Positions 1 through 64,000 of a stretch of DNA of 64,000 bases are shown here, piece by piece. The position numbers and the translations under genes were made by a program. The stretch comes from Selaginella moellendorffii. Lineage: Eukaryota > Plantae > Lycopodiophyta. The DNA lies in the NCBI RefSeq assembly GCF_000143415.4, contig NW_003314392.1, positions 282,390 through 346,389 of the forward strand, written 5' to 3'. Positions within the stretch are counted from its first letter, which is position 1, and the number at the start of each line of letters is the position of its first letter. Below the pieces are notes generated by a model. The model worked only from the letters and a program-made list of their open reading frames with translations. It searched no databases and was not told where the DNA came from.

Positions 1-2274
1 GCGCTTTTTGGGTAAGGTGCAGTATCTCGGTCGTTTTGTGGATCATCTTTCCGATCGCACTACACCATTGCGAGCGTTGCTGAAGTCATCAACGTCATCT
101 TTCATCTGGTCTCCTGATTGTGAGCGGGCATTCGTGAATCTCAAAGAGCTATTGACGACTCCTCCGGTTTTGGCATATCCTGACTACACTCGACCTTTTA
201 TTTTGCGCGTGGATGCTTCTGACATTGGTCTTGGAGGTGTGTTGATGCAAGAGAGCTCGAGTGTGCCTGGTCAGCGCCATCCCATTGCATACATAAGCCG
301 TACATTACAACAAGTGGAGATGAACTACTCCACGACGGAGAAGGAGTGTTTAGCAGCAGTCTGGGGTTTCGAGAAACTTCATGCATATCTATATGGTTCT
401 TGGACGTTACTTGAAGGTGACCATGCTGCTGTTACTTCATTATTGAAACGGAAGAACCTGGTTGGTCGTACGGCTCGATGGGCTTTGAAGCTTCAGATAT
501 ATGATTTCGATGTTGTTCATTGCCCAGGGAGTTCAATGGCTAATGCTGATGCCCTTTCTCGAGCTCCTCTTCCTTCTCCACTCCATTCTCATGTTTATGA
601 CGAACCTGTTGTTCCAGCATCTGTGGATTTTCTAGATGAGGATTCTGTGCCGTCGGCGGTTGCTGTCCTTGACGTTCAGTGTCCACAGGGCGTAGAGCAA
701 GATCTACCTTCTCTGGATGAGGTTCGCGAGGCTCAAAAGATTGAGCCGTGGATTCGAAGGCTTCGAGATGGGTTTGAGAATCCTGCATCACTTGCTGATG
801 ACTTGCCTTTTCGGCATTTACATTCTCAATATCGCCTTGAAGATGGCCTTCTTTATTTTGTGGGGACGGATCCTGATGATCATTTACGGCTAGTGGTGCC
901 TTCGGTGTTTATTCCGCGGTTTCTCCATGCCTACCATGATTCTCCTATTCTAGGTGGGCATATGGGACACCGTCGTGTCACCGAGAAGCTGCGCAGATCT
1001 TTCTATTGGCCAGAGATGCGACGTGATATTATCCGGTATGTGCGTAGCTGCGTTTGGTGTCAAGCTCGTAATACTCCCCCTTGTGCTGCGGAAGGATGGT
1101 TGGAGTCAATTGCAGTTTCTCGTCCGTTTGAGTTGGTGGCGTTTGATCTTATGGGACCTTTTCCGCGATCAACTGCTGGCAATGAGTATGTTATTATTGC
1201 TTCTGACTACTTGACTCGTTGGGTGGAAGTTGGTGCTCTTGCTAGTGCCTCTGCAATTGCTGTTGGATACTTCCTCCTCAATCGAGTGGTGTTCCAGCAT
1301 TCTTGTCCAGAGCGGATTCTTTCGGATAATGGTCCTGCATTTATGGCTGAGGTATTTCATGTTTTGACATCTCGGTTGGGGATACGCCACACTTTTACGA
1401 GTGCTTATCATCCACAATCAGACGATCTGGTGGAACGGCTCGTTCGGACATTCAAAGGGATGATTGCGAAGTATGTGAACTTTCAACATTCGGATTGGGA
1501 TGGTTATTTGCCGTCTCTTCAGTATGCTTATGTCACAGGGGTGCAGAGTTCTATTGGTGCTTCACCATATAAACTTCTATATGGTCATGATCCAATATTA
1601 CCAACAGAGCTGGGTTTACCTTTGCGATTGCCACGAGCTCCTGATGCTAGGTCATGGGATCAATATTTGACAAGCATTCTTCCACTTGTCCGAGCAGAGT
1701 CTGTTGAACACTTAAGCCGCGTACAAGTGGGACAACAACGGCACTACAATTCCCATCATCGTCCACCTGCGGAGTACAAAGTGGATGATTTGATGTTAGT
1801 CCGTTTTCCCCATCTTACGGTACGTGGTTTATCTAAGGGGCTCCTTGCGCAGTGGAAAGGACCGTATCGGGTGTTGCGGCAAGTTGGACCACAAGTTTAT
1901 GAGGTTCGGCATAACATTCAGCAGGCCGATCCTCCGGAGATTGTGCATGTGTAGCAGTTAAAACGCTTCATACAAAGGGATCAGGAGCAGTTAATACTGT
2001 CTACAGATCCACCGATGCCTCCTCCTGACGTTCCTCCAGATCCCGGCCCATCTACAAGAGAACTTTGACGGCCTTCCATTATTCAGAGAGGAGGGGATGA
2101 TGTGAGGGCCAAGTGTACGGCTACGATGCCGTATACTAATATTAGCGTAGTGGATTTTGGTAGTCGTCGGATTGGTTTCAATCCGGACCACTCGCTCCTG
2201 TATATAAGCTAGGGTTTTTGGGCTAATTGAGATGCACATTTCTGTATTCCCTTTCCATATTCCATGCACTCACA
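1..2274 (+). mobile_element. Ty3/Gypsy LTR retrotransposon, 3' part (RT end, RNase H, integrase, PPT, 3' LTR)
   Basis: ORF 8-1954 has RNase H (VDASDIGLGGVL, NYSTTEKECLA), HHCC (GGHMGH...CVWC), DDE (FDLMG, SDNG, LVER) and GPY motifs in Gypsy order. The TAG at 1952 splits the conserved HV-x-QLKRF motif and is probably a nonsense change. Confidence 0.93.
2101..2274 (+). repeat. 3' LTR of the Gypsy element (174 bp)
   Basis: Follows the purine tract AGAGAGGAGGGGA (about 2085-2097); starts TGTGAG and ends CTCACA (6-bp inverted termini); TATATAA at 2201. Confidence 0.75.
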
Positions 2275-2341
2275 CATCCATTTAAACCTTAATTAATATA
2301 CTTATTCCCATGCCAGTCTTTTAAGATGGGACTGGCACTTT

Positions 2342-3325
2342 ATGATTTACAGTTATATCCACAACGAGTATATAAAGAAGGCTAAGCTCCTTTTTACTCC
2401 AATGTCATACAGGGGCATTGTCTCCTGGACTGCTATGCTAGCTGCGTATGCCAAGAGAAAGGAAGCCAAGGAGGTCTTTGACATGATGCCCCTGAGAAAT
2501 CTCTTCCCCTGGACGTTGATGCTGGTTGCACATTTGCTTGACACAAAACTTATGTTTCTTGAGTCCCCTGAGACCGACATGGTATCTTGGACGGTTGTTT
2601 TCGAAGAGATGCCCAAACACGACATTGTTGCCTGGAACGCTACCTGTGCCCAAAACGGGTTTATGGAACTGGCTCTAGCAACTTTCTCCAGAATGCCCGA
2701 GAGGAGTTTGACCTCGTGCAACACAATATTAGCAGAAGGACCACGGCTACATTCGTCTGACCACTCTTCAACGAAATGCCAGAAACTAACCTTATCTCCT
2801 GGACTTCTTTGCTAGCAGCTCACGCTCGAAACGGCCATCTGAAGTTATCAAAGTGTACCTTTGACTCCATGCCCGAGTGGAGCACTGTGACCTGGAACGC
2901 ACTTCTTTCGGTTTACAGCCGTGGAGATTCGACAGAGCAGACCGACAGCTTGTTTCACAGAAAACCAGAACCTGGCATCATACGCTCGAAACAGCCACGT
3001 TTCTGAAGTGATCGACGTCTTCCACCAAATGCCGGCTCGAAACATTATTTCATGGACTACGGCTTTAGGTGCCTTGATCCAAGACGGGAACCTGGAACTT
3101 GCTTCGAGGATGCTAAACCAAATGCCCGAGACCGATCTCATCTCCGTCAGCCAGCTTCTCTCCACTTATGCTGTAAACGGACATATGCTTGAGGCATTTC
3201 AGGTGTTCTTCGCAGCAAACCTAGCCAGGTCGGGCTACTTGGACGATGCCAGAGAGCTCATCCACACAATGCCATTTTTTCCCGGAACTTTGGAGTGGAC
3301 GTGCTTGCACTCCGTCCGTGCGTGA
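2342..3325 (+). pseudogene. PLS-class PPR pseudogene fragment
   Basis: MPxxxxxSW-type repeats spread over three frames; E-domain remnant MPFFPGTLEWTCL. Confidence 0.85.
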
Positions 3326-3339
3326 TCAATCTTATTGCT

Positions 3340-3630
3340 AGTTTGCGAGAGAATTTTCCATGTTATATTATCAGCTTCGACAGGCATCTCTTCCATCATG
3401 ATCATGGCCTCGTCAAGCTCATCCGCCCTGGCAAGAAGATCAATGACACAATGGTAATGAGCCGTGCTTGGCAGGACTTCATACCAGGAAGACATAAGCC
3501 GGAACCTAAGCTTCCCCTCCTTGACGAGGCCGCAGTGGTTGCACACAGCGAGAATGGACAAGAAGGTTGCACTGTCTGGCTTCAAGCCTGCATCTAACAG
3601 TTGATAAAACTCTTCAAACACGACGATCAA
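3340..3630 (-). pseudogene. PPR L2-S2-E fragment
   Basis: PDSATFLSILAVCNHCGLVKEG...HYHCVIDLLARA...MPVEADNITW, with no upstream gene body. Confidence 0.8.
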
Positions 3631-3689
3631 GGTGAGATTGCTCTGGAGCTGTTTGAGTCTCTCAGAGTCTGGCTCTCACGTTTCCTCAT

Positions 3690-4235
3690 GTGCAGCATCG
3701 AACTCTTGGACTTTCATTGCAACACTGAAAGCTTGCTCTAACCTTGCGAGAAAGGAAGATGGATGTGAGCTCGGCAATAGAGGAAAACTTGTCAAGATGA
3801 TGGCACTGCACGCAAGGGGGCAGATGTTAATGTTGCAAACTGCGTGGTTGACATGTATTCCAAGTGTGGTAGCTTGGTGGACGCACGCACTGACATTCAA
3901 GAGCGTCTCCAGGACTATGTTTCATGGAACACTATGCTTCTTGGGTATGTTGAAAGAGTTATACCAGGAGATGGTGTCTGGTGATCGGCGATGCAGGCCA
4001 GATCTTTGGACGTGCTCCTGTGCACTCAAGGCCTGTGTGATCCTTCTTCGTTGCAACTTGGAAAAACGATCCACCGCGAGATTCACAGGCATGCTCACTT
4101 GTTTGCTCGATCTCTATGGCAAATGTGGCAACATGGCTGCCGCTCAGCATGTTTTCGACTCCACGTCCTTGAAGAAGAACTTGGTAAGCTGGAATGCTCT
4201 ACTGGAACGATATAGTCAGGAGGGAGACTCCACTC
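3690..4235 (+). pseudogene. PLS PPR fragment, frameshifted
   Basis: TFIATLKACS and LLDLYGKCGNMAAAQHVFD...NLVSWNALL, with frameshifts. Confidence 0.8.
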
Positions 4236-4806
4236 TCGTCAGCATATCCCAGCATCAGCGTGTTCCATGAAACCACGTCCATCTCTTCGAAGGCTCGCCT
4301 TGCGTCTTGCATGCTCCCACACTTGGAGTACATGTCGATGAGGCTGCTTCCAACGTAAAAATCCCTCGAGATGAGGCTTTGCATTCGAGATCGAGCATGA
4401 ATCGCCATTCCTCTCTCCAAGCTTGTCATCTTCCAGGGATTTGCTCCTTCCGCAGCAAGGCTCGTGACGGGTGACGAAAGTGCGACCATTCGCCATGCAC
4501 TCCACTTCCATGGCAAGGAAAAGCTCTTTCGGAAAAATGCCCGCTCACAGCATAAGCTCGAATGAGCGCATTCCATGCAATGGCGTCGCGGTGCTTCATC
4601 TTGTGGAACACTTTGCTGGCGTCCACGAGACTGCCACACCTGGAGTAGACCGTGACAAGGTTGCTAGCAACGTAGAGATCGTCTTCCAAACCACTAGCAT
4701 GGATTCTCCTTGCCTCGTCTATATCTGTGCACGAAAGGACGAGCACGATATATCTCACACTTGCATTGCTCGAGTGATGGAATGAAGCCACCGGCCATGG
4801 CTGCAT
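4236..4806 (-). pseudogene. PLS PPR fragment, frameshifted
   Basis: LVTVYSRCGSLVDASKVFHKM and LIDMYSKCGSMQDARRAF lie in different frames. Confidence 0.8.
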
Positions 4807-4957
4807 TGCAGGAAGAGCTATGGAGAGCTCGAAAACTGGAACTATATTTCATGCGAAAAGGGAGCCCATCAACATTATATGGAGGGAAAAAAAGAAGCTC
4901 GAGCGAAAAAAGAACGAAGAACAAGCAGAGGAAGAAGAAAAGAGAGAGTATAGAGCG

Positions 4958-7900
4958 TCACCTTCGATTGCAGCTGCCACTCTTGTGGTTTCCAAGCCGA
5001 CGCTTGTACCGCTTCAACACCGATGCAAGGTTCTCCTTCCCTTTCGGAAAGGCGACGTCTCCAGCAGCAGTCCCTGTTCTTCCCTTCCTCGCTCCGACGG
5101 CCGTCTCCACCTCCTTGATCATGTCCAGGTAGAGGTTGCCGCTCGCGGCCTTTCCACTGGGATTGCTTGTGTTCCGCCCCCACGGCCAGGGGAATGGATA
5201 CGACGACCAGCCAGCCGCATCGTTGCGCCTGCCAACGAGTTGATACCCCTGCAGGCATATGCACGGTGGCAGCACGGTTCTCGGACTTAGAAACGCAGGA
5301 TCCAGAATTCCCTGTAAGCACCAAGAGCGATGGATGAATGAGAAACGAAGAACTGGAAAATAAGAAAGCAAGGAGTACCTGGAGACGATTGAGTACGTAA
5401 GTGTACTTCCCCCACAGCTCGGGCCTGCTCTCCATGAGTGCCAGCTCCAGCACACGATGCACACACCACACTCCGAAGCTGACGAGGAGGCCGCTTCCCC
5501 AGACGCAGGAGTCGCCACAGTGCGGCACCCCGGGCACCACCACCTTGTTGACGCTCCAGATGGACGTCCCGTTGCTATATACACTGGCGGCCTCCCCAGG
5601 CTCCGACAAGTCGAGCAGGGACTTTTCTCGAGCAGCGACACCGGCAATGACATCTTCGTCGCAGCCATTGTCGATCTGGAACAGCCACTCGGATCCTTCC
5701 TGCTGTAGCAGTTTCCTCACGCACAGGCGCAGCTGCTCCAAAGTGTCAAGCCCGAACTCAACCCCGGTGGAGAGTCGGAATGCCTTGGTGTTGTTGTTTG
5801 CGTTGTTCGTCGTAGCCACGGACTTCTGCTCGCCGGGAGCTCCAAAGAGGTGCTCGACTGGTCTCGACCACAGTGACTCGGTCTGTTGCGCAGCAGCCTG
5901 TATCGAGAAGCCGTCTCTGTGTGTTTGCGATGGAGAGATGTCGTCGAAGGACAAGGTTGTTCTCTCCGAGTTCTCCGATCTCCCAATGGGATGCGAGAGC
6001 AGGGACTTGTCCAGCTCCCCGGTAGCCCTGTATACGAGTGGATTCCACTTGTCTACCGAGTTGTTCGAGAAGGAGCTCCACTGCTCGTAGTCCGTGGACC
6101 TTGGTAGCCAGGACGACGTATCATCAACGCCTCGTTGACCACCTTTGGAAGCCGAGAACATGTCTTGCGTTGGCTGAAAGACACGAGTCATGGTGTCGGA
6201 CTGATCAAAGTTTGACTTGGCGTAATAAGAAGCGGGGACTTGGGAAAGGCAGCCACCTGTACGCGAAGCCACGTCCAAATGCAGGGACGAGCGTGCTCGA
6301 GCGCTTGACTGCTGCTCCACGCTGCCTGGCCTAGTGTAGGAAGCGATGTTGTACCCGTGAATTGTCGCTGGTTGGCAGTCCAGATCTTCGTGAGCTGCAA
6401 AGCTTCGCAAACTCGAGTACCGCTGGTCGCCACCTGAGTAGCCACTTTTGTAGTCGAAGCACCACCTGTTGCTCGGGCTCTGGGACGACGTAGAAGCGGC
6501 CAAGTTGGAGTGCACCCGTCCAAAGGGATCCACGGAGCCGGAAAAGCAACTCTTGTAGTCCCGCTTGGCAGCTTGTCGCGGAGAGACGAATGGACCATTG
6601 TCGGAGTGCGTCGTCCGGCTGTTCTGAGAGACGCTTGGTTTGATCACCGAGTCGGACCTGACGGGTTGGCCGTGTAAGTCGAACAGTCGTCCCCAAAACT
6701 CATCCAGAGTAGCAGCAAATTGTCTTCGTGATGCACGGCCCAGTCCAGACAACCTCGAGAGGCTTCCGCTTTCGCTTCCATGCGAGCATCCGTCGCTCGA
6801 CTCCTTCCTGGTACTTATTACTGATTCAATCCCTTCGTAAGTTAAGCTCAGAGCTGAGCTCATAACCGCGCAGTCCTGCTCGAGATTCTCCCAGCTTTCG
6901 GCTTCTTCATCGTCCTTCTCCAGGGAAATAGCGTCCTTGTCTAGTCCGCCAATTTCAGAGGAGGCTACTGCACTTGTTTCGCCGCTACTGTATGGAACGT
7001 TGTCGTTAGTTGGAACAGAAGTTGGCTCGGGCTCGATATGATGGTCGATATGATGGTGATCAACACGCGAGGACGGGCATTCTTCAGTACCAACATCGGA
7101 GCTGTTGGAAGTTGCGGTAATGCTGGCTTCCTCTTCACCTGTATCTTCACGTACACTGTCGCTGAGATGGCTGGCGTCAACTTTACTTTGCTGTAACACT
7201 GGCAGGCACTCATCGGCTTCAGACTCCACCACAGTCACAGTCCCGACCTCACTCTCCGATATCAGCTCGGCTCTTTCAGTGTTGATGATGTCCTCGACGG
7301 TTCCTACATCACTACTCCTGGAACTGTTGCCATCCAAAGGAATGTAATACACTAGATCCTTCTCCTTGTCCATGAGCTGACCATCTTTCTCTTCAACAGC
7401 GAAAGCCGGAGTGTCGGACCTGATCGGAGCAAAGATGAGCCAGACTAGAAAGCCGACCGCAGCAGTCACCACCGTGAGAGCGACTGGCACGGTCAGAGAG
7501 TTGGAATCAGAACCAGCCACAAACTCCCAGTTTGTAGACCCCCCGAACTCCTCGCTCTGGCTAAAGAGCGTACTAAACACCAAGCAGAGGTTGAGTGATA
7601 TCACGAAAGCCAATACTGACCACGCGAGCACTTCCCAAAGTGAAGAGATCTTGTTCTTCCCCATGTAAGCCGCAGACGACGTTAGCCGAATGAGAGGAAC
7701 CAGTGTGAAAGGAAGCTGAAGAGCGAGTATAACCTGAGATAAGACGAGCAGCTGGTAAATCCCCTCGTTGCCATACGACCAGGCGCAAAAAACTGCGATG
7801 GTCACTGCTGCCGCTCGCATCACAAGCCGGTGACGCCATGCGTCGATACGTTTCCCGAGAAGTCCCTCACTAGCAACCTGGCTGACCAACGTCCCTGTTA

Positions 7901-53308: not shown

Positions 53309-55303
53309 TTAGGTGGTGTATGACCACATGTTGGCTATCAGCGAGTAGAAAGCACTGGTAGGCACTGACGGATAGCTTGAGTTCTTCTTGCCATCGTCAT
53401 GGTCGAAAACTTTGTCATTGTCTCGCGAGAGATTGCTTCTCGCGTAGCCTCCCAGCAAGCACGTCCACTCTAGGTCGCTGGGCACAAACGGCATGTTTTG
53501 GATGGCATCCTGGGCATCTCGCGAGTGCGCAGATCGGGCAAGCAGATCCACCACGCCAGTGTAGTGGTCTTTAGAAGGCTCCAGCCCAAAGTCCACCACC
53601 ATCGACATCAGAAACTTGCGAGCACTCGAAACCTTCCCGGCATGGCTGCAAGCGATGAGCAGCGATGTGAAGCACGAATCACTTGCGCGGCCTATCGTCA
53701 CGTCGCCACCATTCGTGATCATCGTGTGAAATGTGAGCATCGTCGCTGATTCCAGTTTGTTGTAGGCATAGCCCGCGATCATGACGCTCCACGCAAGTCC
53801 ATCTCTCTCCGGCATGGCATCAAACACTGCCTTGGCCTGATGGATGTGCCCGTTCCATGCATACGCTGTCAGCATTGCCGTCCACAGCGCTGGGTTCCTC
53901 TCGGGCATTGCTTCCAGGGAATGTCTTGCCTCGTCAAGATGCCCATCAAGCCCATACAGTGGTAGCATCACTGCCCAGCTCACAGCGTTTTGCTCGGGCA
54001 TCTCTGCTAGCAGCTTCTTGGCCTCCTCCACACACCCGTTTCTAGCGTAAGTCTGGAGCATCGACGTCCAGGAGATCAAGTCCCGGAGAGGCATTGCCTC
54101 AAACAACCTCTTGGCTTCGCTCAAGCACCCACACTTTCCATACACGAAAAGCATTGAGTTGAATGACGGAAGGTCCAGCTGAGGCATCGAATCCAGCACA
54201 CGCCTCGCCTGCTCCAAATCTCCAGCTTGAGCATATGCAGCGAGCAACGAGCTCCATGAGAGCACATTCACTCGCGGCATTCGATCAAAAGTGGCTTTGG
54301 TCTCGGCGACGTGATGCCGGCTGTAGGCGGCGAGCATGGCGTTCCACGCGATTAGATCTCTCTCAGGCAAGCGATCAAAGAGGAGCTTGGCGTCCTCCAA
54401 GCGATCGCTCTGAGCATACGCATGCAAGAGTGTAGTCCACGAGACTAGATCTAGTTGCGGCATGGAGTGTAGAATGATCCTAGCTTCGTCAACCCTCTCG
54501 CACTGTACGTAGGCCATTAGGAGCGCATTCCAAGCAACTAGATTTGTTTGAGGCATTGAGTCGAACAAGGCTTTAGCGCTTTCCAAATGCCCGTGCTGGG
54601 CATAAGCGGCAAGCATTGCAGTGCAGGATATGAGGTCGTGCTCTGGCATTTCTTCGCTAAAGAATGCCCATGCACGCACGAGATCTTTTCTATCAATAAT
54701 GGTTCCCAGCATTGTCGTCCATGACACGATGTTCCACATCGGCATTGTCTCAAACAAGTCCATGGTTCTTACAACATGCCCTTCACGGGCATATGCAGAC
54801 AAGAGCACGGACCAGGAAACAAGATCCTTTTGTGGGAGCAAGTCGAAAGTCCTCTTTGCTTCGTCTTGAGATCCATTCTGTGTGTAAGCAGCCAAGATTG
54901 TGTTCCATGAAACAAGACTGTGCTGAGGCATAGAATCAAACACTTCTTGGGCCTCAACAAGATGGCATGCTTCGGCAACTGCACGAAGAAGAATGTTCCA
55001 TGAAACGACGCTGGGCTGTGGCATCGCGCGGAAGAATTCTCGGGCCTGGTCGAGCTGCCGGTTGCTGGTGTAGGCCAAGAGCATCATGTCCCAGGAGAAG
55101 GAATCATTTTTGACTTGGTTCTTGTCGAAGATCTGGCGTGCCAGGGCGGGGCTTCCACACCTGGCGTACATTTCAATCAGCTTGTTTGCGAGGAAGGAGT
55201 CGGAGCTTGCGGAGAGAAAGGAATGGGCTGCCAAGTGAATCTCTTTTGCATCATTGAGCGTTTTGCAAGATTGAATGGCTTCCACAAGCTGCCTCCTCTC
55301 CAT
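53309..55303 (-). CDS. PLS/SS-class PPR-E protein without DYW (664 aa)
   Basis: 31-aa MPxxxLVSW repeats; ACSHAG; MPFVPSDLEWTCLL. Confidence 0.92.
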   Translation of the reverse strand: MERRQLVEAIQSCKTLNDAKEIHLAAHSFLSASSDSFLANKLIEMYARCGSPALARQIFDKNQVKNDSFSWDMMLLAYTSNRQLDQAREFFRAMPQPSVVSWNILLRAVAEACHLVEAQEVFDSMPQHSLVSWNTILAAYTQNGSQDEAKRTFDLLPQKDLVSWSVLLSAYAREGHVVRTMDLFETMPMWNIVSWTTMLGTIIDRKDLVRAWAFFSEEMPEHDLISCTAMLAAYAQHGHLESAKALFDSMPQTNLVAWNALLMAYVQCERVDEARIILHSMPQLDLVSWTTLLHAYAQSDRLEDAKLLFDRLPERDLIAWNAMLAAYSRHHVAETKATFDRMPRVNVLSWSSLLAAYAQAGDLEQARRVLDSMPQLDLPSFNSMLFVYGKCGCLSEAKRLFEAMPLRDLISWTSMLQTYARNGCVEEAKKLLAEMPEQNAVSWAVMLPLYGLDGHLDEARHSLEAMPERNPALWTAMLTAYAWNGHIHQAKAVFDAMPERDGLAWSVMIAGYAYNKLESATMLTFHTMITNGGDVTIGRASDSCFTSLLIACSHAGKVSSARKFLMSMVVDFGLEPSKDHYTGVVDLLARSAHSRDAQDAIQNMPFVPSDLEWTCLLGGYARSNLSRDNDKVFDHDDGKKNSSYPSVPTSAFYSLIANMWSYTT

Positions 55304-55753
55304 TCATCATTCAAAGTTTCTCTCGAGTTTGAGAGACGTTGGAGCAATAAAGTAAATCGACCCTTAGGGTTTTCTTGTTCCAGACTTAGATTTTCACTTG
55401 TATTATTTGTCTCTCTCGTGATGGAGAACTTCCAGAGCTCCAAATGATCTATTGAAAGCATTAGAGAGCCTTTGAAAGTTCTCCATGGCGTCTTGGGAAG
55501 GGGAGACATGGACATGGACATGGACATGGCGGGTCTTCTTTGCATGCTTCATGAAATCATTTCTCTCTCTGTTTGTTCACCCGTGTTCTTGCTCACAATA
55601 AATTTGAACAGCCCCTATCTGAGAATCAAGAAAATGCATTCTACTTTTTTTCTTCTTTTAATCTAAAAGGATTCACTTCACAAAATCTTAGTACTTACTT
55701 GGAAGAATGAATGAATCAAAAGCTAAAAACGCTAGAGCAACTAAAACCCTGCT

Positions 55754-57666
55754 TCAGTACTTGTGATTGACGAACCGGCACTCCTTCCTGATCTGGCCCT
55801 CCGATCCCAGCAGCGGCTTGATGGCAGCCATCCTCACCATGGACGCTACAAACTCCTGGAAGAACTTTGCCTGGTCGTAGGCAAATGCCGTAACCAGTGC
55901 GCTGGTGGGAGCATACGGCGCAAACAGCACCTGGTCCGACGTAAGAACACCCTTGTGAAGCTCCAGATCGACGAAGAAGTGATTGTCAAACTTGGTGGGA
56001 GTGACGATGTCCAGAGGCGTCGTCTCCTGCGCGTTGCCTTTGGGAGGACAAATGTGCTCGAGGCTGCGGAGGAGCGCCGGGTCGATGCTCGGATCTGGCC
56101 GACGAGTTCCCGCAAAGTTGTAGAGGCGCTGCCGGAAGCTGGCGCAGCGTGACACGCCGATGGTGTGAGAGCCCGTCAGTGCTACCAAGTCCACGATGGA
56201 CAGGCCCTTCTTGGCAAACGCGGCGATGAGCTGCGGAAGCGTCGAGTTGGGAGGCGGGATGTCTCTGTTGGCCAGGCTGCGGCTCGCAGTCAGGCTGTCT
56301 CGACGACCAAGATGAACTTCCCACGACGGGCCTCCAGTCTGATTCATGCCACACAGAAAAGAAGTGAGATCAAAGTCTAGTATCGAAGTACGTACCAGGA
56401 CGACCGAGTCCCGTGCAGCAATGGCGAGAACGTCGGCACAAGAAACAACACCCTCGCATTCCTTCTCCAGAGCAGCCTTGATCTCGTCAATGACTTCGAA
56501 GCCACGAGCCGAGTTCCTGTTGGGATTGGCGGTCTTTTCTCCTTTGAAAGTATGCGTATCGTCCAGAAGTATGGAAGCATCACATCCCTGCAAGAAATTC
56601 ACATCTTATTCTCATCAAAAACAAAGAAAAACAAAGAAAAAAGAATGCAACAACTTACCAGAACGAAACAATCGTGGAACTGAAGCCTGAGAATGTTTGC
56701 AGCAGTTCTAGAATCCTTTTCCACAGCCTGCTGCAAGACTTTCTTCACGATAGACTCGGCAGCGGGGCACTTCTCCTTGTAGAAGCCAGGCCGCAACACA
56801 GCAACTCCCATCTCCGCAGAAGTAGCACCACCGGGAAATGGAAATGGTCGTCCTCCTGGGAATGGAAAACCCCGTCCTGCTGGGAATGGAAAGCCTCCCA
56901 CGCCAGGCCTCGGTATCATGCCACCGGGAAGTAAACCCGGGATGGCTGGAAACTTTGGAACTTGCTCCTTCGGAACTACTGGATACTCCGGAACCTTTGG
57001 AACTTCGGGGACCGGCTGCTTGGGAGGAATCTCGGGAACTACTGGATACTCCGGAACCTTTGGAACTTCGGGGACCGGCTGCTTGGGAGGAATCTCGGGA
57101 ACTACTGGATACTCCGGAACCTTTGGAACTTCGGGGACCGGCTGCTTGGAAGGAATCTCCGGAACTACTGGATACTCCGGAACCTTTGGAACGGGAACTT
57201 CTGGAACTTTGGGAACTTCTGGCACTTTGGGTGGAATTTCTGGAACTGTAGGTATTTCTGGAGGAACCTCCGGTACCTTGGGAATGATTGGAACTGCTGG
57301 AACTTTGGGAACCTCCGGAACCTTTGGAACTTCTGGAATTACTGGAACCTCTGGAACCTTTGGAACTTCTGGAACGACTGGAACTTCCTTCGGCGGGACC
57401 TTTGGAACGATCGGAATCTCTGGAATCCTTGGAATCTGTGGAATGCTGGGGATCTCCGGGATCTTGGGAATCGGAATGGTGATCTCTGGGATCAAAGGAG
57501 GAAACTCCTGCGCACCGCCAGCTCCCGGAAAGAATCCAGCGCCAAGCTGTGGCGGAATAAATCCTGGGAACCCCGCAAATCCTCCTTGCTCGGCCTGTCC
57601 ATCCACTGCCCAAGCAAGAACAAGGAAAAGAATGCGTAGCGGCACGAGAAGACGATCCATGGCCAT
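55754..57666 (-). CDS. Class III peroxidase with a ~260-aa N-terminal Pro-rich (PEVPK/PEYP) repeat domain
   Basis: Exon 1 (57666-56659) runs without a break through signal peptide, repeats and LRPGFYKEKCP..LRLQFHDCFVL. Exon 2 is 56587-56396; exon 3 is 56338-55754 (GSHTIG, FDNHFF, GQIRKEC). TATATAA at 57709-57703. Confidence 0.9.
56972..57191. repeat. 63-bp coding tandem repeat, about 3.5 copies (VPKVPEYPVVPEIPPKQPVPE)
   Basis: Near-identical units start at 56972, 57035, 57098 and 57161. Confidence 0.95.
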
Positions 57667-58703
57667 GCCTGGAGAAGAAATCTCGCAGCAATCCTCTGGC
57701 GCTTATATAGCAGCTCCATTCTTCCTGCTTGGATCGTGGCTGACTTCACACTTCACCTAGAAATCTTGACTAGCCACTGGCATGCGAGAAGAAATCGAAG
57801 AAGAAGAAAAAGAAGAAGAACAAGAATCCACCGCGTCGCGCCTTCCCTACTAGCGAACAGCTAACCCTAACCTAATCGCGCCCAGAGAGGTGACAGATGA
57901 TGTTTGTGCTTTGTATTTTGTCAGCTCCAACCTAAAACTCCACATTGCATCTAATATTGCATGCTACACCAGGTAACAAATTGATGGAATCATTCGAGTC
58001 TTGCATTTACCAAGTTCCAAGCTTTCCTGTGAAAAACGAATTCATACACGATAGTGGAAACTGACGAAGAATCCCATTCATAAACATTGTAAATTTGTAT
58101 GTGATGAAATGCATAGTACTCACTAGACGTCTGCTGCCATTCACTGGAGAAATCCATAGCGAGGAACCAGATGTAAAAAAGAAAAAAACATAGAGAGTGA
58201 TACACATACCGTATGGTAACAAGAAGCGCAGGGGATCGCAGTGGTGCAATCCTCCAGATTAACTACCTTGCTTAAGTCATGCCTATATCGTACCATTCCA
58301 TGTTTAGGAGCTCCTTTAACATGGGTTCGTGGGCGTGTTTTTGAAGCGTGGTTACCATAAAGATTTTGCTTCGGTCTTTGACTGGTCCAACTATAGATTT
58401 ACACGCCTCTTTGAAAACGAAGTATTTGGATGGAGCACTGATCTTTCCCTGCCTTGTCACGTTCTTTTGTCTTCTTTGCTGTGCAAGTTTGAACATGGCA
58501 AAAAAAATGAGATTTAACGGGAGGCCTCTAGTTTTGAATACAAGAAAAGGACTGTTGACAGTGTTTTGGAAGTCGTTCTTGTCACATCCGGGAAATTAAA
58601 AGAAGCCGTTCCAATGGTCCTTCCTGGCGGTGGCGACTTGGAAGTCTTGCCATTACACATATTGGGGCTGCCTGAAGCCATTTATCGATAGTCGAATTGT
58701 TTG

Positions 58704-60617
58704 ATGGCTTGGATCGTCGCCCTTCTCGTAGTGGGGATTCTTCACATTCACCTGGGAGCAGCGGAAGTATCAGTGCAACGGGGTGAACTGGCTGGAGTAA
58801 ACAGCTCCAGAGCACTTCTAAGCATGAGCGGTGATACGTCTCAGAAATCCATCTGGTGGCAGTTCATTCCGCACCTCAAATCGCATCCAGAGGTCTTCTT
58901 GAGGTACTTGGTGTCGATTCCCATTCCAGAAGAGGAGCTGGGCAGTGTAGAACAGGTATGTGACAAGGACTATCTGAAAGAGATCCGTGATAGGGGAGGG
59001 CTCTTAGCAACCAGGAATGCATCCATAGCAGAGTATGAGTCCTCCGAGCACGTCAAGGGTCTGGGAACCATGAAGATCACCATGTGGCTGCTGGCATTTG
59101 TCTGCCTGCAGGAAAACCAGCAGGCCGCATCTACAGCAGATGCCGCCTGTGAACCAATTGCACCAGTTGTTCTGCGGGTTACTCCTCAAGATTATGATCA
59201 GGAAATCAGAAACTGGACAAGGTACTCACCAACATACTTCAGCTTGTGGGAGGTAGTCAGTGACAACAGTAATGTCCAACAGGTCACAAACACGGTTCCC
59301 TCCAGGATACTGGAGTTTCCAACTGAGTACTATACAAACACACAGTCAGAGTCAGGGTTTCAAGCTAGAACTCTAGCAAGGGAAAGCTACAAAAACTTAC
59401 CAAACTGTGGCAACTTAGGATTTGACATCTTTGCTGATCGAGGTGAGGTTGCGCTGACTGATAAAGGAGCCCGCTTACCATCTCCAAACGTGAGAAAAGC
59501 TCCTGAAGCAGGTGTGTACAACTATGGTGGAGCCGCGAAATGTTATAGAATGGATGAAGAGTTCAAGAACGCCACAGGCAGTGAGCTTCTCACTGTCCTG
59601 GGACCGGCCTTTCTTCCGGGCAAAATTGTTGGAGGCTGCCAAAGCGAGTCACCCTTTCTGTTTTCCAACCAGTCGGGCTACTACGCTTGCTACAGTGAGG
59701 AGCTGAATGCTACTGGAACCACACTCAGCTCGTGGAGATTCCACTGCGTACACTTCGACTGTGGCGAGAAAGAAGTGAAAGCCAGTCTGGTGCCGTATTT
59801 CAAAGCCGTCTATGAAGCTTCCAGGAACGAGACCAATACACTGGTGCCTTTGCAAAGACAGAGCTGCTCAGGACTTTCATCTATCTGGGTGCGAACGACG
59901 AACAGTCCGTCATCCAACTTTCCTCTCTATGATGCACCAGTATGTGAAAATAGAAGAGCAGCCAAGCCGGAAATGTGCTTGTGGGGCATAGATCCACCCC
60001 AGGATCTGCTGCAAACAAGTTCGGACATAGACATTCTTAGCTCGCTGCTCTCTCAAGTTAAAGCGTCGTACATTGCTGAGCATCTCTCGCTTTTGAACCT
60101 GGAGCAAGGTTCCCCGGCGGAGTTCTGGGTGGTGGCCATAACTCTCCCCAGTGCTTTCATCGCAGTTGTTGCGGGAGTGGTGCCATTGACAGATGCACAG
60201 TTGAAGCTGGTGCGAGGTGTGAGAGTCTCTTCACGCTTGAAACTAGGGCTTTTGTGCTGCTGCAACCTGGTCCTGGCCATTGTTTCCTACTCCGCTGTTG
60301 TGGCTTTGACGCCGACTGAGTTGCAAAGAGAGAAGAGTTTCAGGAGCTGGGCACTACACGCTGACCAAGTGCAGGTGACAAGCCATGGATTGCGAGTGCT
60401 GGTTGTTGCTCAGGGCGAATCGACTTACAAATCAAATAGTCTCCTGCTCGCATGGGTGTCCACAGCGGTTTTGATGCCAGTGGTCCTTTTGATCACCTTC
60501 CTGAGATGCAGGCAGGAGCTTAGAACTCTTCAAAGCCATAGGAGGAGCAGTTTGGGTGGGATGCAGCTTTCTTCACGAACGCCAAAGAGGTTTCTGAGAT
60601 CCTATAGTCTAATATGA
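58704..60617 (+). CDS. Uncharacterised intronless surface protein: signal peptide, ~450-aa Cys/N-glycan-rich ectodomain, 3 predicted TM helices
   Basis: Clean 637-aa ORF in AT-richer flanks; hydrophobic stretches FWVVAITL.., LGLLCCCNLVL.. and LLLAWVST..; no family recognised. Confidence 0.8.
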   Translation: MAWIVALLVVGILHIHLGAAEVSVQRGELAGVNSSRALLSMSGDTSQKSIWWQFIPHLKSHPEVFLRYLVSIPIPEEELGSVEQVCDKDYLKEIRDRGGLLATRNASIAEYESSEHVKGLGTMKITMWLLAFVCLQENQQAASTADAACEPIAPVVLRVTPQDYDQEIRNWTRYSPTYFSLWEVVSDNSNVQQVTNTVPSRILEFPTEYYTNTQSESGFQARTLARESYKNLPNCGNLGFDIFADRGEVALTDKGARLPSPNVRKAPEAGVYNYGGAAKCYRMDEEFKNATGSELLTVLGPAFLPGKIVGGCQSESPFLFSNQSGYYACYSEELNATGTTLSSWRFHCVHFDCGEKEVKASLVPYFKAVYEASRNETNTLVPLQRQSCSGLSSIWVRTTNSPSSNFPLYDAPVCENRRAAKPEMCLWGIDPPQDLLQTSSDIDILSSLLSQVKASYIAEHLSLLNLEQGSPAEFWVVAITLPSAFIAVVAGVVPLTDAQLKLVRGVRVSSRLKLGLLCCCNLVLAIVSYSAVVALTPTELQREKSFRSWALHADQVQVTSHGLRVLVVAQGESTYKSNSLLLAWVSTAVLMPVVLLITFLRCRQELRTLQSHRRSSLGGMQLSSRTPKRFLRSYSLI

Positions 60618-61249
60618 CCAGTTTTAATCTGAAAAGACAAATTGTCTGTCTAATTTTAAAAGACTTCTGCTTTCATCATGGAGCTAGATCTACCCTGAAC
60701 CACGGTAACTTGAGATGACCAAAAATTGCACGGACCACATATTATAAACGTCCATAGATTTTTTGATTGATGTTAAGTGAGTGGCTGAAAGAATTCACAT
60801 ATTAAACAGCCTGAAATGTGATCTCTGCTAGATCACTTATAATTACCCATTCTCTTTCTGTTTGGTACATTTCACAAGAGGTGATAATAAAATCTAAATT
60901 TCTTATTATAATAATTCCATCATGGTTATGTTAGGTGAAATTTGCTATGTTATGCAGAAGCAATAGCACAATCTCATGTACAACAAGAACCACAGCCAAA
61001 GAGCATTATGCTATATCAATTCATCCTTTTGTGGAGGAAAACTAGATTTATTTATTTTATTAGAATATTTAATTGTATTATCTTTGAATCATGATATTTA
61101 GTTTTTTTTATTAGACTTATATGTTATTAAATTTATCGGATTCAAGATTGAAGTCCTGAAGATCAAGTTTTATATTTGGTGCATTATGTTGACTTCTGTT
61201 GGGTTGACTTGAGCTCATCGAATGAACTGAACTCAAAAACTACCTAGCC

Positions 61250-62147
61250 TCTTGAAGCCACGAGCCAGAGTTCCAGTTCGTCCATAAAAATCACATCTTC
61301 TTGTCAAATCCAAAGAAAAAAAAATGCAACAAACTTACCAGAACGAAACAATCATGGAAGTGAACCCTGAGAATGTTGAAGCAGTTCTTGGATCTTTTTC
61401 CACAGCCTGCCCTTCACAGTGGACTCGGCAGCAGGGCACTTCTCCTAGTAGAAGCCAGGCCGCAACATAGCAATGCCCATGCAGAAGTAGCACCACCGGG
61501 AAATGGCCTGAGAATGGAAAACCCTGTCCCTGACGCCAGGCCCCGGTATCATGCCACTGGGAAGCAAACCCGGTATCACTGGAAACTTTGGAACTTTGGG
61601 GACCGGCTTCTTGAGCGGAACCTCGGGAACTACTAGATACTCCGGTACCTTTGGAACTTCGGGGACAGGCTTCTTGGGAGGAATCTCCGAAAGTACTGGA
61701 TACTCCCGAACCCTTGGAACTGGAACTTCTGGCACTTTGGGAAGTTCCGGAACTTTGGGTATTTCTGAAGGAACCTCCGGTACCTTGGGAATGACTGGAA
61801 CCTATGAAACTATGACCGGAACCTCCGGAACCTCTGGAACCTCAGGGATGACTGGAACCTCCGGAACCTCTGGAACTTCTGGAATGACTGGAACCTCTGG
61901 AACCTTTGGAACTTCTGGAACGACTGGAACTTCCTTCGGCCTTTGGAACGATCAGGATCTCTGGAATCCTGGGGATTTCCGGATATTAGGAATCGGAATG
62001 GTGATCTCTGGTATCTCTTGCGCGCCATCAGCTCCTGGAAAGAATCCAGCACCAAGCTGTGGCGGGATAAATCCTGGGAACCCCGCAAATCCCCCTCATC
62101 CACTGCCCAAGGAAAAGAATGCGTAGCGGGGCGAGAAGACGATCCAT
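61250..62147 (-). pseudogene. Decayed tandem copy of the Pro-rich/peroxidase gene
   Basis: Same promoter, repeats and LRPGFY*EKC..ILRVHFHDCFVL plus intron 1; frameshifts; 3' part lost. Confidence 0.92.
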
Positions 62148-62308
62148 GGCTGGAGAAGAAATCTCGCACCAATCCTCTGGCGCTTATATAGCAGCTCCAT
62201 TCTACCTGCTTGGATCGTAGAAATGCGAGAAGAAATCACCGCGGGAGATCCTTCTCCCCTACTAGCGAATAGCCAACCCTAACCTAATCGCGCCCGGAGA
62301 GGTGAGAG

Positions 62309-62785
62309 ATGATGTTCGTGCTTGCGCCATTGCTCTTCTTCCTGGCATCGCTGCCTCGATTGTCCCTCGCCGCTGACGCCATTCTCCCCAGCGCCGAGGT
62401 GTCGCGATTCTTGGAAGAGCATGGCCTTCCCGGCGGTCTTCTCCCCAATCTGGTCACCAGCTACTCGCTGCGCGACAACAATTCCACATTCGTCGTCCAT
62501 CTCCAGCACGAATGCTACCACCGCTTCGAGAATCTGGTGTGGTATGGCACTACCATCTCTGGGAAGCTGGGCTATGGCAAGATCGAGAATCTATCGGGGA
62601 TCCAGGCCAAGGAGTTCTTCCTGTGGCTGGGAGTGACGGGAATTCGCGTGGATGAATCCAACCGAGACTATATCTACTTTGAGGTGGGGATTGTGTCTAA
62701 GAGGCTGCGCGCATCGCTCTTTCGAGATCCACCATCGTGCTCAAAGTCTAGTGGCTCTCTTGTGGATCTACACGAGGCAATCTAG
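62309..62785 (+). CDS. DUF538 family secreted protein
   Basis: Signal peptide; FLEEHGLPGGLLP..ISGKLGYGKIENLSGIQAKEFFLWL..FEVG..F..PPSC. Its 3' end is re-duplicated at about 62828-62895. Confidence 0.92.
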   Translation: MMFVLAPLLFFLASLPRLSLAADAILPSAEVSRFLEEHGLPGGLLPNLVTSYSLRDNNSTFVVHLQHECYHRFENLVWYGTTISGKLGYGKIENLSGIQAKEFFLWLGVTGIRVDESNRDYIYFEVGIVSKRLRASLFRDPPSCSKSSGSLVDLHEAI

Positions 62786-62997: not shown

Positions 62998-64000
62998 CTA
63001 GAAGATCGAGGATTGCTCCAGCCTCCGTCTCTCCTTTTGCCTCGCGCGTCGAGCTTTTCTCCTGAGCGTTGCCACCGACGGCGGCCTCACCTCCTCGTCC
63101 AGTTCCACGTAGTGTTTCTCTGGCATGAGACCACCATCCCACTCTATCACCGCTTGAGCTCCTCCATTTCTATCCCAGTGTTCTTGCTCGCTGAAAGTAC
63201 GCTTCTTCTTCTTCCGCTTGGATTGGAGCTCCATTCTCTCCTCTTGCTTTTCCTTCTCCAGTCCTTGCTTCTCGTGATATGGCCGCTCCTCCTCGTGAAC
63301 TTGCTGCTGCCCATCCTGGATCTGTTCTAGTGCTTGACGCTTCTTCTTCTTCTTCTTCTTCTTCGGGTTCTCGGAGAGCTCAGAATTTTTTTCCTCCGCA
63401 AAAACCAGCTGGTTCTTCTCTTTCCCCTCGGCCACCAAAGTTTCCTTCTCCACTCCATCCGGTTCAAGCTCCTTCCGCTTCTTCTTCCGTTTCTTAACGT
63501 GCTCTACATTCTCTTCTTCTGGTTGAGGCTGCTCTTGCCCCTGCTCCACCTGAGCTCCTCCATCTTGTTTTAGCTCCTTACGCTTCTTCTTCCGTTTCTT
63601 GACGGGCTCAGCTTGAAGCTGGTTTTCCTTTTGGTCCTCAATTTGCTGCTGCTCTTCCTGTTCGACTTCCTTCCGCGTCTCCTTCCGGTTCTTGACGACC
63701 TCAAGACTCGGTTGAAACGGATTTATCTCTTTTTCCGACAAAGTTTCCTTCTCCGAGCACTGTTCTTTCTGCTGCTGGTCCGTCTGAGTTCCTCCATCGT
63801 ACTCCAAACTCTTTTGCTCCGCTTGACCCTGGATTTGTTTCTTCTTGCCTGCAAGCTTTACTTTCACTGGCCACTCCCGCTCTTCTTGCTGCTCCTGCTG
63901 CGCCTGAGCCCCTCCATCCTGGACTAGCTCTTGTTCTGTCTCCTGGCTTTCGGACTTCTTGCGTAAATATTTCTCGGCCTGAAGCTTCTCAGCCGCGAGA
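62998..64000 (-). CDS. Lys/Glu/Gln-rich low-complexity protein, C-terminal part (runs off the window)
   Basis: Frame is open from the window end to TAG at 62998; repeated DGGAQ..Q and KKRKKKRKEL (NLS-like) units. Confidence 0.75.
   Translation of the reverse strand, partial: LAAEKLQAEKYLRKKSESQETEQELVQDGGAQAQQEQQEEREWPVKVKLAGKKKQIQGQAEQKSLEYDGGTQTDQQQKEQCSEKETLSEKEINPFQPSLEVVKNRKETRKEVEQEEQQQIEDQKENQLQAEPVKKRKKKRKELKQDGGAQVEQGQEQPQPEEENVEHVKKRKKKRKELEPDGVEKETLVAEGKEKNQLVFAEEKNSELSENPKKKKKKKKRQALEQIQDGQQQVHEEERPYHEKQGLEKEKQEERMELQSKRKKKKRTFSEQEHWDRNGGAQAVIEWDGGLMPEKHYVELDEEVRPPSVATLRRKARRARQKERRRLEQSSIF

What the first reader, a model, noticed from the sequence alone, without database searches (positions are those of the whole stretch)
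55754..57666. Peroxidase fused to its own candidate substrate: a Tyr/Lys/Pro repeat domain plus F/P/G modules
Seen: one exon encodes a signal peptide, GFAGFPGFIPPQLGAGFFPG, about 200 aa of PEVPK/PEIPK repeats including four VPKVPEYPVV units, then GFPFPAGRGFPFPGGRPFPFPGG, then a complete class III peroxidase with distal Arg/His and proximal His intact. There is one upstream TATA and no second signal peptide. The decayed copy at 61.3-62.1 kb has the same fusion, so it predates the duplication and is unlikely to be an assembly artefact. Known: class III peroxidases are normally ~300-350-aa single-domain proteins; they cross-link Tyr in separate Pro-rich wall proteins; PELPK-type proteins are standalone; plants including Selaginella have repeat-precursor/enzyme fusions (BURP peptide cyclases). 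Inference: this is either a self-cross-linking, self-anchoring wall enzyme or a heme-peroxidase analogue of a fused RiPP precursor, with Tyr-containing or FPFP cores as products.
Basis: partly seen in the sequence, partly recalled or inferred. Interest (0 to 1): 0.85.

Follow-up and report, generated by a model that had tools for sequence, protein, structure and literature searches.

The report
Peroxidase with built-in proline-rich wall domain
A Selaginella gene really does encode a secreted wall peroxidase carrying a 257-residue proline-rich, wall-protein-like repeat between its signal peptide and the enzyme. It is made as one spliced mRNA, public annotations truncate it, and what the extra domain does is still unknown.

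Summary
The core observation holds. On the minus strand, 57666-55754 is one gene of 594 codons in Selaginella moellendorffii. It encodes a signal peptide, a Gly/Phe/Pro module, about 200 aa of PEVPK/PEIP repeats with four PEYPVV units, an FPFP module, and a complete class III peroxidase.

Two details are wrong.
- The gene has three exons, not one. Introns of 71 and 57 nt lie inside the peroxidase part. Only the repeat plus the peroxidase N-terminus up to the distal His share exon 1.

RNA contigs from four studies carry both splices. One contig runs from the 3' UTR 350 nt into the repeat, past the proposed internal start. The 5' contigs have similar depth, and no joint lies inside the repeat.

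The other haplotype has no indels, with pN/pS of 0.14 in the extension and 0.09 in the enzyme. The nearby copy is a truncated pseudogene with the same layout.

All public protein models found (309 and 345 aa) start at internal Met and lack a signal peptide.

The repeat has nested 9/18/36/63-bp periods, so it looks expanded in place rather than captured from another gene. Other class III peroxidases have gained unrelated low-complexity N-extensions.

The most likely function, which is inferred, is a wall tether or self-anchor. A RiPP-like role is unlikely.

The parts
57667..57863 (-). Transcribed 5' leader. The ATG at 57783 opens an 8-codon uORF. The ATG at 57719 opens a 75-codon out-of-frame uORF that overlaps the main ATG.
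   Evidence: RNA contigs reach 57718 (X4), 57771 (X12) and 57863 (X1). The uATGs were found. The proximal 75 nt are identical in the other haplotype and nearly so in the decayed copy.
56659..57666 (-). Exon 1 (336 codons). It holds the signal peptide, the whole N-extension, and the peroxidase N-terminus through the distal Arg/His (RLQFHDCFVL).
   Evidence: ORF and splice model. The donor at 56658 is seen spliced in 4 RNA runs.
57595..57666 (-). Signal peptide, codons 1-24 (MAMDRLLVPLRILFLVLAWAVDGQ).
   Evidence: Hydrophobic core with Kyte-Doolittle values up to 2.6. It is the only signal-like segment in the protein.
57511..57594 (-). N-side Gly/Phe/Pro module, codons 25-52.
   Evidence: Translation.
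56911..57510 (-). PEVPK/PEIP proline-rich repeat domain, codons 53-252 (34% Pro, pI about 5).
   Evidence: Nested tandem periods of 9, 18, 36 and 63 bp. It is 51-54% identical to the repeat of an angiosperm PELPK1-like protein.
56972..57192 (-). 3.5 copies of a 63-bp (21-aa) unit at 98% identity. These carry the four PEYPVV tyrosines.
   Evidence: Tandem Repeats Finder, score 428. Units are printed. The decayed copy has only two such units.
56824..56910 (-). Linker plus FPFP module, codons 253-281 (pI 12).
   Evidence: AlphaFold2 gives pLDDT below 40 for this stretch, while the enzyme scores above 90.
56588..56658 (-). Intron 1 (71 nt, GT..AG). It lies after FHDCFV-L, the classical first intron position of class III peroxidase genes (from my own knowledge of the family; the only comparison made here is the second Selaginella gene).
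   Evidence: Joint 56586/56658 in all 4 RNA runs.
56396..56587 (-). Exon 2 (64 codons), GCDAS...DSVVL.
56339..56395 (-). Intron 2 (57 nt, GT..AG).
   Evidence: Joint 56338/56396 in all 4 RNA runs.
55754..56338 (-). Exon 3 (194 codons plus stop). It contains the proximal His458 and the C-terminal half of the peroxidase.
55628..55753 (-). 3' UTR.
   Evidence: RNA contigs end at 55628-55640.
61245..62330 (-). Truncated pseudogene copy. It keeps the same leader, the start codon (62147), the signal peptide, the repeats, an FPFP remnant, the peroxidase N-terminus, the start of intron 1 and a scrap of exon 2. Similarity then ends.
   Evidence: 88% identity over aligned bases, 15 deletions and several insertions, most not multiples of 3, and in-frame stops. 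The public model SELMODRAFT_449384 (214 aa) sits on it.

Best explanation
This is a real, expressed and so far mis-annotated Selaginella moellendorffii gene. It encodes a 594-aa secreted class III haem peroxidase. Between the signal peptide and the mature enzyme sits a 257-aa intrinsically disordered, proline-rich domain. That domain is a PELPK-like PEVPK/PEIP array flanked by Gly/Phe/Pro modules.

Shown:
- the three-exon structure;
- a single spliced mRNA;
- an intact catalytic machinery;
- conservation of the frame, with low pN/pS, between haplotypes;
- decay of the duplicate copy.

Inferred:
- The array arose by tandem expansion in place of a short 9-bp-based motif in the pre-mature region. 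It was not captured from a wall-protein gene.
- It acts as an extended wall-interacting tether that holds the oxidising domain at a fixed place in the wall matrix. Binding would be non-covalent through its alternating Glu/Lys and Val/Ile/Pro surface. It could also become covalent through peroxidase-driven coupling of its four Tyr.

The confidence of 0.5 is for the functional reading. The structural part I hold at about 0.9.
For: Gene structure and expression:
- Gene model and residues.
- RNA: one contig per run joins the 3' UTR, both splices and 350 nt of the repeat (55640-57009). It crosses Met286, Met250 and the FPFP module. The 5' contigs have similar depth (X1 8.7 vs 9.5; X12 88 vs 88-98; X4 84-93 vs 69-111), the flanks have zero, and there is no joint inside the repeat. 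This holds in four different studies.

Conservation:
- Second haplotype: 21 SNPs and no indel over 1913 nt. The extension has 2 nonsynonymous and 5 synonymous changes (pN/pS 0.14). The enzyme has 2 and 7 (0.09).
- Further alleles seen in RNA are substitutions only.
- The pseudogene shows what neutral decay looks like here.

Need for the upstream start:
- Only the upstream ATG gives a signal peptide. The public models of 309 and 345 aa lack one, and a class III peroxidase needs the secretory path.

Nature of the repeat:
- It resembles wall proline-rich proteins: PELPK1-like at 51-54% identity, and plant HRGP/PRP clusters by language-model features.
- Expansion in place is suggested by nested periods, 2 versus 4 units between the paralogues, and no standalone relative in the proteome.
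Against: - No experiment or proteomic datum shows that the extension is kept on the mature protein or touches the wall.
- It lacks the known cross-link motifs (0 YxY, 0 VYK, 0 SP runs).
- The pN/pS figures rest on 7 and 9 changes.
- Frame maintenance is needed simply to translate the enzyme behind the signal peptide, so it does not prove a function for the repeat itself.
- Contigs break in the 63-bp repeats (57009-57163). No single contig in any one run spans the whole mRNA.
- The leader contains a strong-context out-of-frame uATG at 57719. In the longer transcripts this should depress translation from 57666.
- No orthologue with this extension was found in any other species, so the function could be marginal.
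Confidence: 0.5

Rival explanations
1. Cleaved pro-region or spacer. The extension is translated but removed or degraded during maturation. Its only role would be in folding, trafficking or latency, and the working enzyme would be an ordinary ~310-aa peroxidase.
For: AlphaFold2 predicts the FPFP stretch to be disordered and not docked on the enzyme. The solved mature peroxidases begin exactly at the residue aligned with LRPGFY. The sister paralogue carries a short ~30-aa pre-mature stretch after its signal peptide, so a pro-region seems ancestral.
Against: 257 aa is very long for a pro-peptide, and no dibasic or other recognisable processing site precedes the mature N-terminus. The repeat shows as few amino-acid changes between haplotypes as the enzyme does.
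Confidence: 0.2
2. Tolerated neutral repeat expansion. Replication slippage inflated a low-complexity segment that is harmless because it lies between the signal peptide and a self-folding domain. It has no function of its own.
For: Nested 9/18/36/63-bp periods and 98% identical units show recent slippage. The copy number differs between the paralogues. Several unrelated low-complexity N-extensions occur in other class III peroxidases, and those placed in the tree lie on separate branches. No orthologue with the same extension was found.
Against: pN/pS is 0.14 in the extension. There is no length polymorphism between two haplotypes that differ at 1.1% of sites, nor among the RNA alleles. The composition is not random: it has a regular Glu/Lys/Val/Pro pattern like known wall proteins.
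Confidence: 0.2
3. Fused RiPP-like precursor. The peroxidase oxidatively cross-links Tyr- or Phe-containing cores of its own N-terminal repeats, and these are then released as modified peptides. This would be analogous to BURP-domain peptide cyclases.
For: The only support is the formal analogy of repeats fused to an oxidising enzyme, plus four identical Tyr-containing 21-aa units.
Against: There is no BURP domain; only PF00141 is found. No protease-recognition flanks are visible. The decayed paralogue has only two Tyr units against four here, and the 63-bp units in this gene are 98% identical. Class III peroxidases generate diffusible radicals without peptide specificity (established knowledge of the family). 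The FPFP module shows no predicted contact with the enzyme.
Confidence: 0.03
4. Annotation or assembly illusion. Under this reading, two adjacent genes (a proline-rich protein and a peroxidase) only seem joined.
For: Both public annotations start the peroxidase at internal Met and called nothing upstream.
Against: Spliced RNA contigs run across the junction in four studies. The same frame is intact in a second haplotype scaffold. The same layout is present in the pseudogene. The truncated models have no signal peptide.
Confidence: 0.03

Closest known systems
Plant class III secretory peroxidases (PF00141; e.g. horseradish C1A, banyan peroxidase 4CUO; Arabidopsis PRX72/PRX49/PRX9-like sequences)
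   Same: The C-terminal 310 aa align end to end with solved enzymes (E 7e-102). All catalytic, Ca-binding and disulfide residues are present. The best single-domain hits are 56-59% identical. Two introns lie inside the peroxidase part.
   Different: Ordinary members are 300-350 aa with the mature N-terminus right after the signal peptide. This one has 257 extra residues there. No clear orthology to PRX9, PRX40 or PRX72 emerged. Identities are uniform, and the tree places it only weakly (SH-aLRT 89) beside a Selaginella paralogue.
PELPK proteins (Arabidopsis PELPK1/2 class; Newman and Cooper 2011, PMC3149072)
   Same: A secreted protein with tandem P-E-[VIL]-P-K units. It is 51-54% identical over 135-175 aa to a PELPK1-like repeat.
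   Different: The PELPK class is described as angiosperm-wide, standalone, and with conserved non-repeat termini. The three angiosperm examples fetched share a G-A-R-x-L-x-E-S start after the signal peptide, which is absent here. The exact PELPK motif was neither counted nor seen in the translation. The similarity may be convergent low complexity.
Chimeric proline-rich wall proteins (hybrid PRPs with a lipid-transfer domain, Pollen Ole e I fusions, LRX, PERK)
   Same: The logic is the same: a Pro-rich tandem-repeat domain joined to a globular domain behind one signal peptide. The repeat is thought to fix the globular part in the wall (for the LT and Ole e I fusions; LRX and PERK from general knowledge).
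   Different: The globular partner here is the oxidising enzyme itself. I found no paper that describes a Pro-rich/peroxidase chimera.
Other N-extended class III peroxidases: S. moellendorffii XP_024515020.1/XP_024516686.1 (475/493 aa), transcripts P0040/P0184, and a Lithospermum/Escallonia group
   Same: A low-complexity stretch lies between the signal peptide and the mature enzyme. In the Selaginella case it is in the same exon as the peroxidase N-terminus.
   Different: Their extensions are Gln/Asn/Pro-rich, Gly/Asn/Pro/Tyr/Ser-rich or acidic, 75-150 aa long, and unrelated in sequence. They lie on separate branches of the tree.
Animal peroxidasin (a haem peroxidase with matrix-binding domains that cross-links collagen IV)
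   Same: The working analogy is an extracellular peroxidase that carries its own matrix-targeting modules (general knowledge, not tested here).
   Different: It belongs to a different peroxidase superfamily, has different partner domains and uses different chemistry. There is no homology.

Membership tests
Class III plant peroxidase | Peroxidase domain (PF00141) over its full length | tested here: met
   4.9e-68 covering profile positions 28-235, plus 1-29 on exon 1. Residues 6-306 align to 2-303 of 4CUO. AlphaFold2 pLDDT is above 90 over the domain.
Class III plant peroxidase | Distal Arg/Phe/His, proximal His, distal Ca ligands (HDCFVxGCDAS), and eight Cys for four disulfides | tested here: met
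   R327, F330, H331 and H458. Cys at 300, 333, 338, 380, 386, 465, 497 and 587. These are invariant columns in the 36-sequence alignment.
Class III plant peroxidase | N-terminal signal peptide for secretion | tested here: met
   It is met only with the start at 57666. No SignalP-type tool was available, so the judgement rests on hydropathy and n/h/c layout.
Class III plant peroxidase | Single-domain protein of about 300-350 aa | tested here: not met
   594 aa, with a 257-aa extension.
PELPK class of proline-rich tandem-repeat proteins | PELPK-type pentapeptide repeats | tested here: inconclusive
   The extension has 7 PEVPK and 7 PEIP. PELPK itself was not counted and is not seen in the translation. 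Repeat identity to a PELPK1-like protein is 51-54%, but in low-complexity sequence.
PELPK class of proline-rich tandem-repeat proteins | Conserved non-repeat N- and C-termini, standalone architecture, angiosperm distribution (PMC3149072) | tested here: not met
   There is no GARxLxES-type start. It is fused to an enzyme, and the organism is a lycophyte.
Extensins / classical PRPs | Ser-Pro(3-5) blocks with YxY or VYK cross-link motifs, or PPVYK/PPVEK repeats | tested here: not met
   0 SP, 0 YxY and 0 VYK in the extension.
BURP-type fused RiPP precursor/cyclase | BURP domain with repeated core peptides in the same polypeptide | tested here: not met
   Pfam finds only PF00141.
BURP-type fused RiPP precursor/cyclase | Released, cross-linked peptide products | not testable with these tools
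   This needs LC-MS/MS.

The most novel reading that the evidence does not exclude
The proline-rich domain is the enzyme's own substrate and anchor. With H2O2 the peroxidase couples the Tyr (and perhaps Lys) of its tether to neighbouring copies or to wall polymers. The protein thereby builds itself into the wall as an immobilised oxidase. This would be a plant counterpart of peroxidasin, and the first case of a wall structural protein and its cross-linking enzyme in one polypeptide.
Probability: 0.2. Interest if true: 0.75.

Novelty: new variant of a known kind. Interest (0 to 1): 0.55.

Why it matters
Class III peroxidases are among the largest plant enzyme families, and how individual isoforms are positioned in the wall is largely unknown. 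An isoform that carries its own wall-protein-like domain offers a natural experiment on targeting by tether. It may also test enzyme-plus-substrate coupling.

There is a practical lesson too. Both public annotations cut this protein at internal Met. At least three further Selaginella peroxidase models are affected: one drops the signal peptide, two of its RefSeq/GenBank versions mis-splice the distal-His segment, and one carries a doubtful C-terminal tail. N-terminal low-complexity extensions of peroxidases may therefore be systematically under-annotated.

Tried and rejected
- **Looking up the truncated model's locus.** P0002 is not on record. The pseudogene model P0001 led instead to the second-haplotype scaffold.
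- **An unexplained 594-aa product.** That scaffold lists a called gene with a 594-aa product spanning 831-7042. I could not retrieve it. It did not appear in either protein search, so I do not count it as prior annotation.
- **Orthology to the extensin peroxidases PRX9/PRX40.** PRX9 is 56% identical, no better than PRX72-like sequences at 57-59%. The tree gives no supported placement. The idea was dropped.
- **P0040 as an orthologue.** This is a Logan transcript with a Gly/Asn/Pro/Tyr extension, considered as showing an ancestral extension. The tree puts it elsewhere, and the extensions align only by composition. Its species could not be found.
- **Docking of the FPFP module on the enzyme.** AlphaFold2 gives pLDDT below 40 there, so there is no signal.
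- **Full-length structure prediction.** It was not attempted, because the spliced protein has no reference and long letters may not be typed.
- **Literature.** Seven of the nine searches were aimed at a proline-rich/peroxidase chimera or an N-terminal extension of class III peroxidases, and none found a description.
- **Long hits in the protein searches.** Most proteins above 450 aa are tandem peroxidase mis-joins or mispredictions, not extensions.
Full report
**Identity and gene structure**

The window is from Selaginella moellendorffii. The nearest database proteins are SELMODRAFT models and RefSeq XP entries of that species.

The minus strand from 57666 to 55754 does not form one exon. The 355-codon ORF that starts at 57666 runs past FHDCFV-L into an intron, and a second ORF resumes at GCDAS. 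Two GT..AG introns, 56658-56588 (71 nt) and 56395-56339 (57 nt), give a 1785-nt CDS of 594 codons.

- Exon 1 (336 codons) carries the signal peptide, the whole extension, and the peroxidase N-terminus including distal R327 and H331.
- Exons 2 and 3 carry the rest of the enzyme, including proximal H458.
- All eight Cys of the family are present.
- Pfam PF00141 covers the domain.
- The domain aligns end to end with solved plant peroxidases; 4CUO scores E 7e-102.
- AlphaFold2 folds it at pLDDT above 90.

**The extension**

After a 24-residue signal-like segment come four parts:
- a Gly/Phe/Pro module (codons 25-52);
- 200 residues of PEVPK/PEIP repeats (34% Pro; 7 PEVPK, 7 PEIP, 4 PEYP);
- a short linker;
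- the basic FPFP module (codons 253-281).

There is no Cys, no Ser-Pro run, no YxY or VYK, and no N-glycosylation site in the extension.

At the DNA level the array has nested tandem periods of 9, 18, 36 and 63 bp. The four Tyr lie in 3.5 copies of a 63-bp unit that are 98% identical.

Because of this regularity, two of the three minus-strand frames and one plus-strand frame are free of stops inside the repeat. The long antisense and alternative-frame ORFs are by-products of this. The strand and frame are fixed by the splice orientation and by continuity with the peroxidase.

**Transcription**

I laid Logan contigs of four RNA runs from four studies on 55400-58100.

- In three runs, one contig of about 1240-1260 nt joins 55628/55640-56338, 56396-56586 and 56658-57000/57009; in the fourth (X4) two contigs between them carry the same two joints. 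This contains both predicted splices. It continues 350 nt upstream of the exon-1 donor, across Met286 (56811), Met250 (56919), the FPFP module and the last Tyr unit.
- Contigs break in the near-identical 63-bp units. Short contigs from different runs tile the gap (56971-57064, 57037-57189, 57163-57337).
- The 5' contigs have about the same word depth as the 3' contig.
- No joint lies inside the repeat, and coverage is zero in both flanks.

Nothing in it argues against a single transcript. What is still missing is a single molecule that spans the repeat.

The leader reaches at least 57718, 57771 and 57863 in three runs. That leader holds two upstream ATGs. One, at 57719, has a strong context, is out of frame, and overlaps the main start. 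This is unexplained and is a caveat for translation efficiency.

**Conservation**

The alternate-haplotype scaffold GL377928.1 carries the same gene (L001 5130-7042).
- There are 21 substitutions and no indel in 1913 nt.
- By Nei-Gojobori counting, the extension has 2 nonsynonymous and 5 synonymous differences (pN/pS 0.14). The enzyme has 2 and 7 (0.09).
- The numbers are small. My own binomial estimate is about 0.02 for 2 of 7 against a neutral expectation of 0.74.
- Further alleles seen in RNA are substitutions only.

The copy at about 62330-61245 shares the leader, start, signal peptide, repeats, FPFP remnant, peroxidase N-terminus and the beginning of intron 1.
- It is 88% identical over aligned bases.
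- It has 15 deletions (10, 13, 19, 13, 4, 10, 1 nt and others), stop codons, and only two of the 63-bp units.
- It loses similarity after a scrap of exon 2.

The architecture therefore predates the duplication. One copy has been kept and the other has decayed.

**Annotation status**

The GenBank models EFJ04367/EFJ11137 (309 aa) start at Met286. RefSeq XP_002987834.2 (345 aa) starts at Met250. Neither has a signal peptide. The pseudogene is annotated as a 214-aa hypothetical protein.

The full-length protein did not appear in a word-indexed search of 5.8 billion clusters.

**Distribution**

- With exon 1 as query, the only significant relatives were the two models above. The rest were compositional hits to PELPK-like, periaxin-like and bacterial surface proteins.
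- An exhaustive HMMER search with the peroxidase part gave 4922 hits. Most over-long proteins among the best 150 are tandem or mispredicted models.
- A few carry genuine low-complexity N-extensions behind a signal peptide:
  - another S. moellendorffii gene (XP_024515020.1/XP_024516686.1; Gln/Asn/Pro-rich; same exon-1 arrangement);
  - a transcript family of unknown species (P0040/P0184; Gly/Asn/Pro/Tyr/Ser-rich);
  - an asterid group with acidic repeats.
- An earlier, unchecked note of this scan reports a third such gene in this genome.
- In a quick maximum-likelihood tree these lie on separate branches. The present gene sits weakly (SH-aLRT 89) beside a normal-length Selaginella paralogue, whose true start gives a signal peptide and only a 30-aa pre-mature stretch.

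Such extensions thus seem to arise repeatedly. This PEVPK array has no known orthologue.

**Interpretation**

I consider the structural conclusions secure, at about 0.9. For origin, I favour expansion in place over fusion with a pre-existing wall-protein gene. The reasons are the nested periodicities, the copy-number change between paralogues, and the absence of a standalone relative.

For function, the best-supported reading is a wall-interacting tether on a secreted oxidase.
- The repeat looks like PELPK-type wall proteins, at 51-54% identity, and like plant HRGP/PRP clusters by language-model features.
- It is not a member of the PELPK class as defined by Newman and Cooper (PMC3149072).
- Covalent self-anchoring through the four Tyr is possible but has no motif support.
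- A cleaved pro-region and a neutral expansion remain serious rivals.
- The RiPP analogy has nothing beyond form in its favour.

**Novelty**

Searches of the paper library found no description of a proline-rich/peroxidase chimera, nor of N-terminal repeat extensions in class III peroxidases. The library is incomplete, so this is absence of evidence only. I rate the finding a new variant of known kinds: a class III peroxidase and a chimeric proline-rich wall protein.

Noticed in passing
window 57492-57719 (-) and 57760-57783 (-): The transcribed leader holds two upstream ATGs. One has a strong context (GAAGAATGG), is out of frame, and opens a 75-codon uORF that overlaps the main start codon. 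The proximal 75 nt are identical in the other haplotype and almost so in the pseudogene.
   Followed up: partly
window 57787-57826: A CTT/GAA microsatellite in the leader varies in length. It is 15 nt shorter in the other haplotype, and one RNA contig has a 12-nt gap there.
   Followed up: partly
window 58701-60617 (+): A single 638-codon ORF lies between the gene and its pseudogene copy. It has a hydrophobic N-terminus and hydrophobic C-terminal segments, and no Pfam match. It is called as a 618-aa gene on the other haplotype.
   Followed up: partly
window 62309-62785 (+); 53309-55303 (-); 62998-63867 (-): The neighbours are a DUF538 protein (1e-30), a 664-aa PPR protein, and a Lys/Glu/Gln-rich 289-aa ORF with no Pfam match.
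   Followed up: partly
L003 2501-3280 (GL377632.1): A second S. moellendorffii class III peroxidase (XP_024515020.1, 475 aa) has about 150 aa of Gln/Asn/Pro-rich repeats between the signal peptide and the enzyme. These are in the same exon as the peroxidase N-terminus. The haplotypes differ by 18 aa in repeat length.
   Followed up: partly
L004 2950-3456 (GL377583.1): The nearest paralogue's public models (347, 336 and 330 aa) start at an internal Met without a signal peptide. An ATG 17 codons upstream restores one. The 336- and 330-aa versions also mis-splice the distal-His segment.
   Followed up: partly
window 56918-57760 (+) and 56708-57691 (-, other frame): Long Gly/Thr/Ser-rich and Ser/Arg-rich ORFs overlap the repeat. 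They arise because the repeat unit lacks stops in several frames, and they are not genes.
   Followed up: yes
proteins P0178, P0110, P0189 (Lithospermum, Escallonia): An asterid group of class III peroxidases has acidic N-extensions. One Escallonia sequence (P0189) repeats a WIHGE(R)PGNEEPDKQDERD-type unit, while the Lithospermum extension is acidic and Gln/Gly-rich without that motif. This looks like another independent extension.
   Followed up: no
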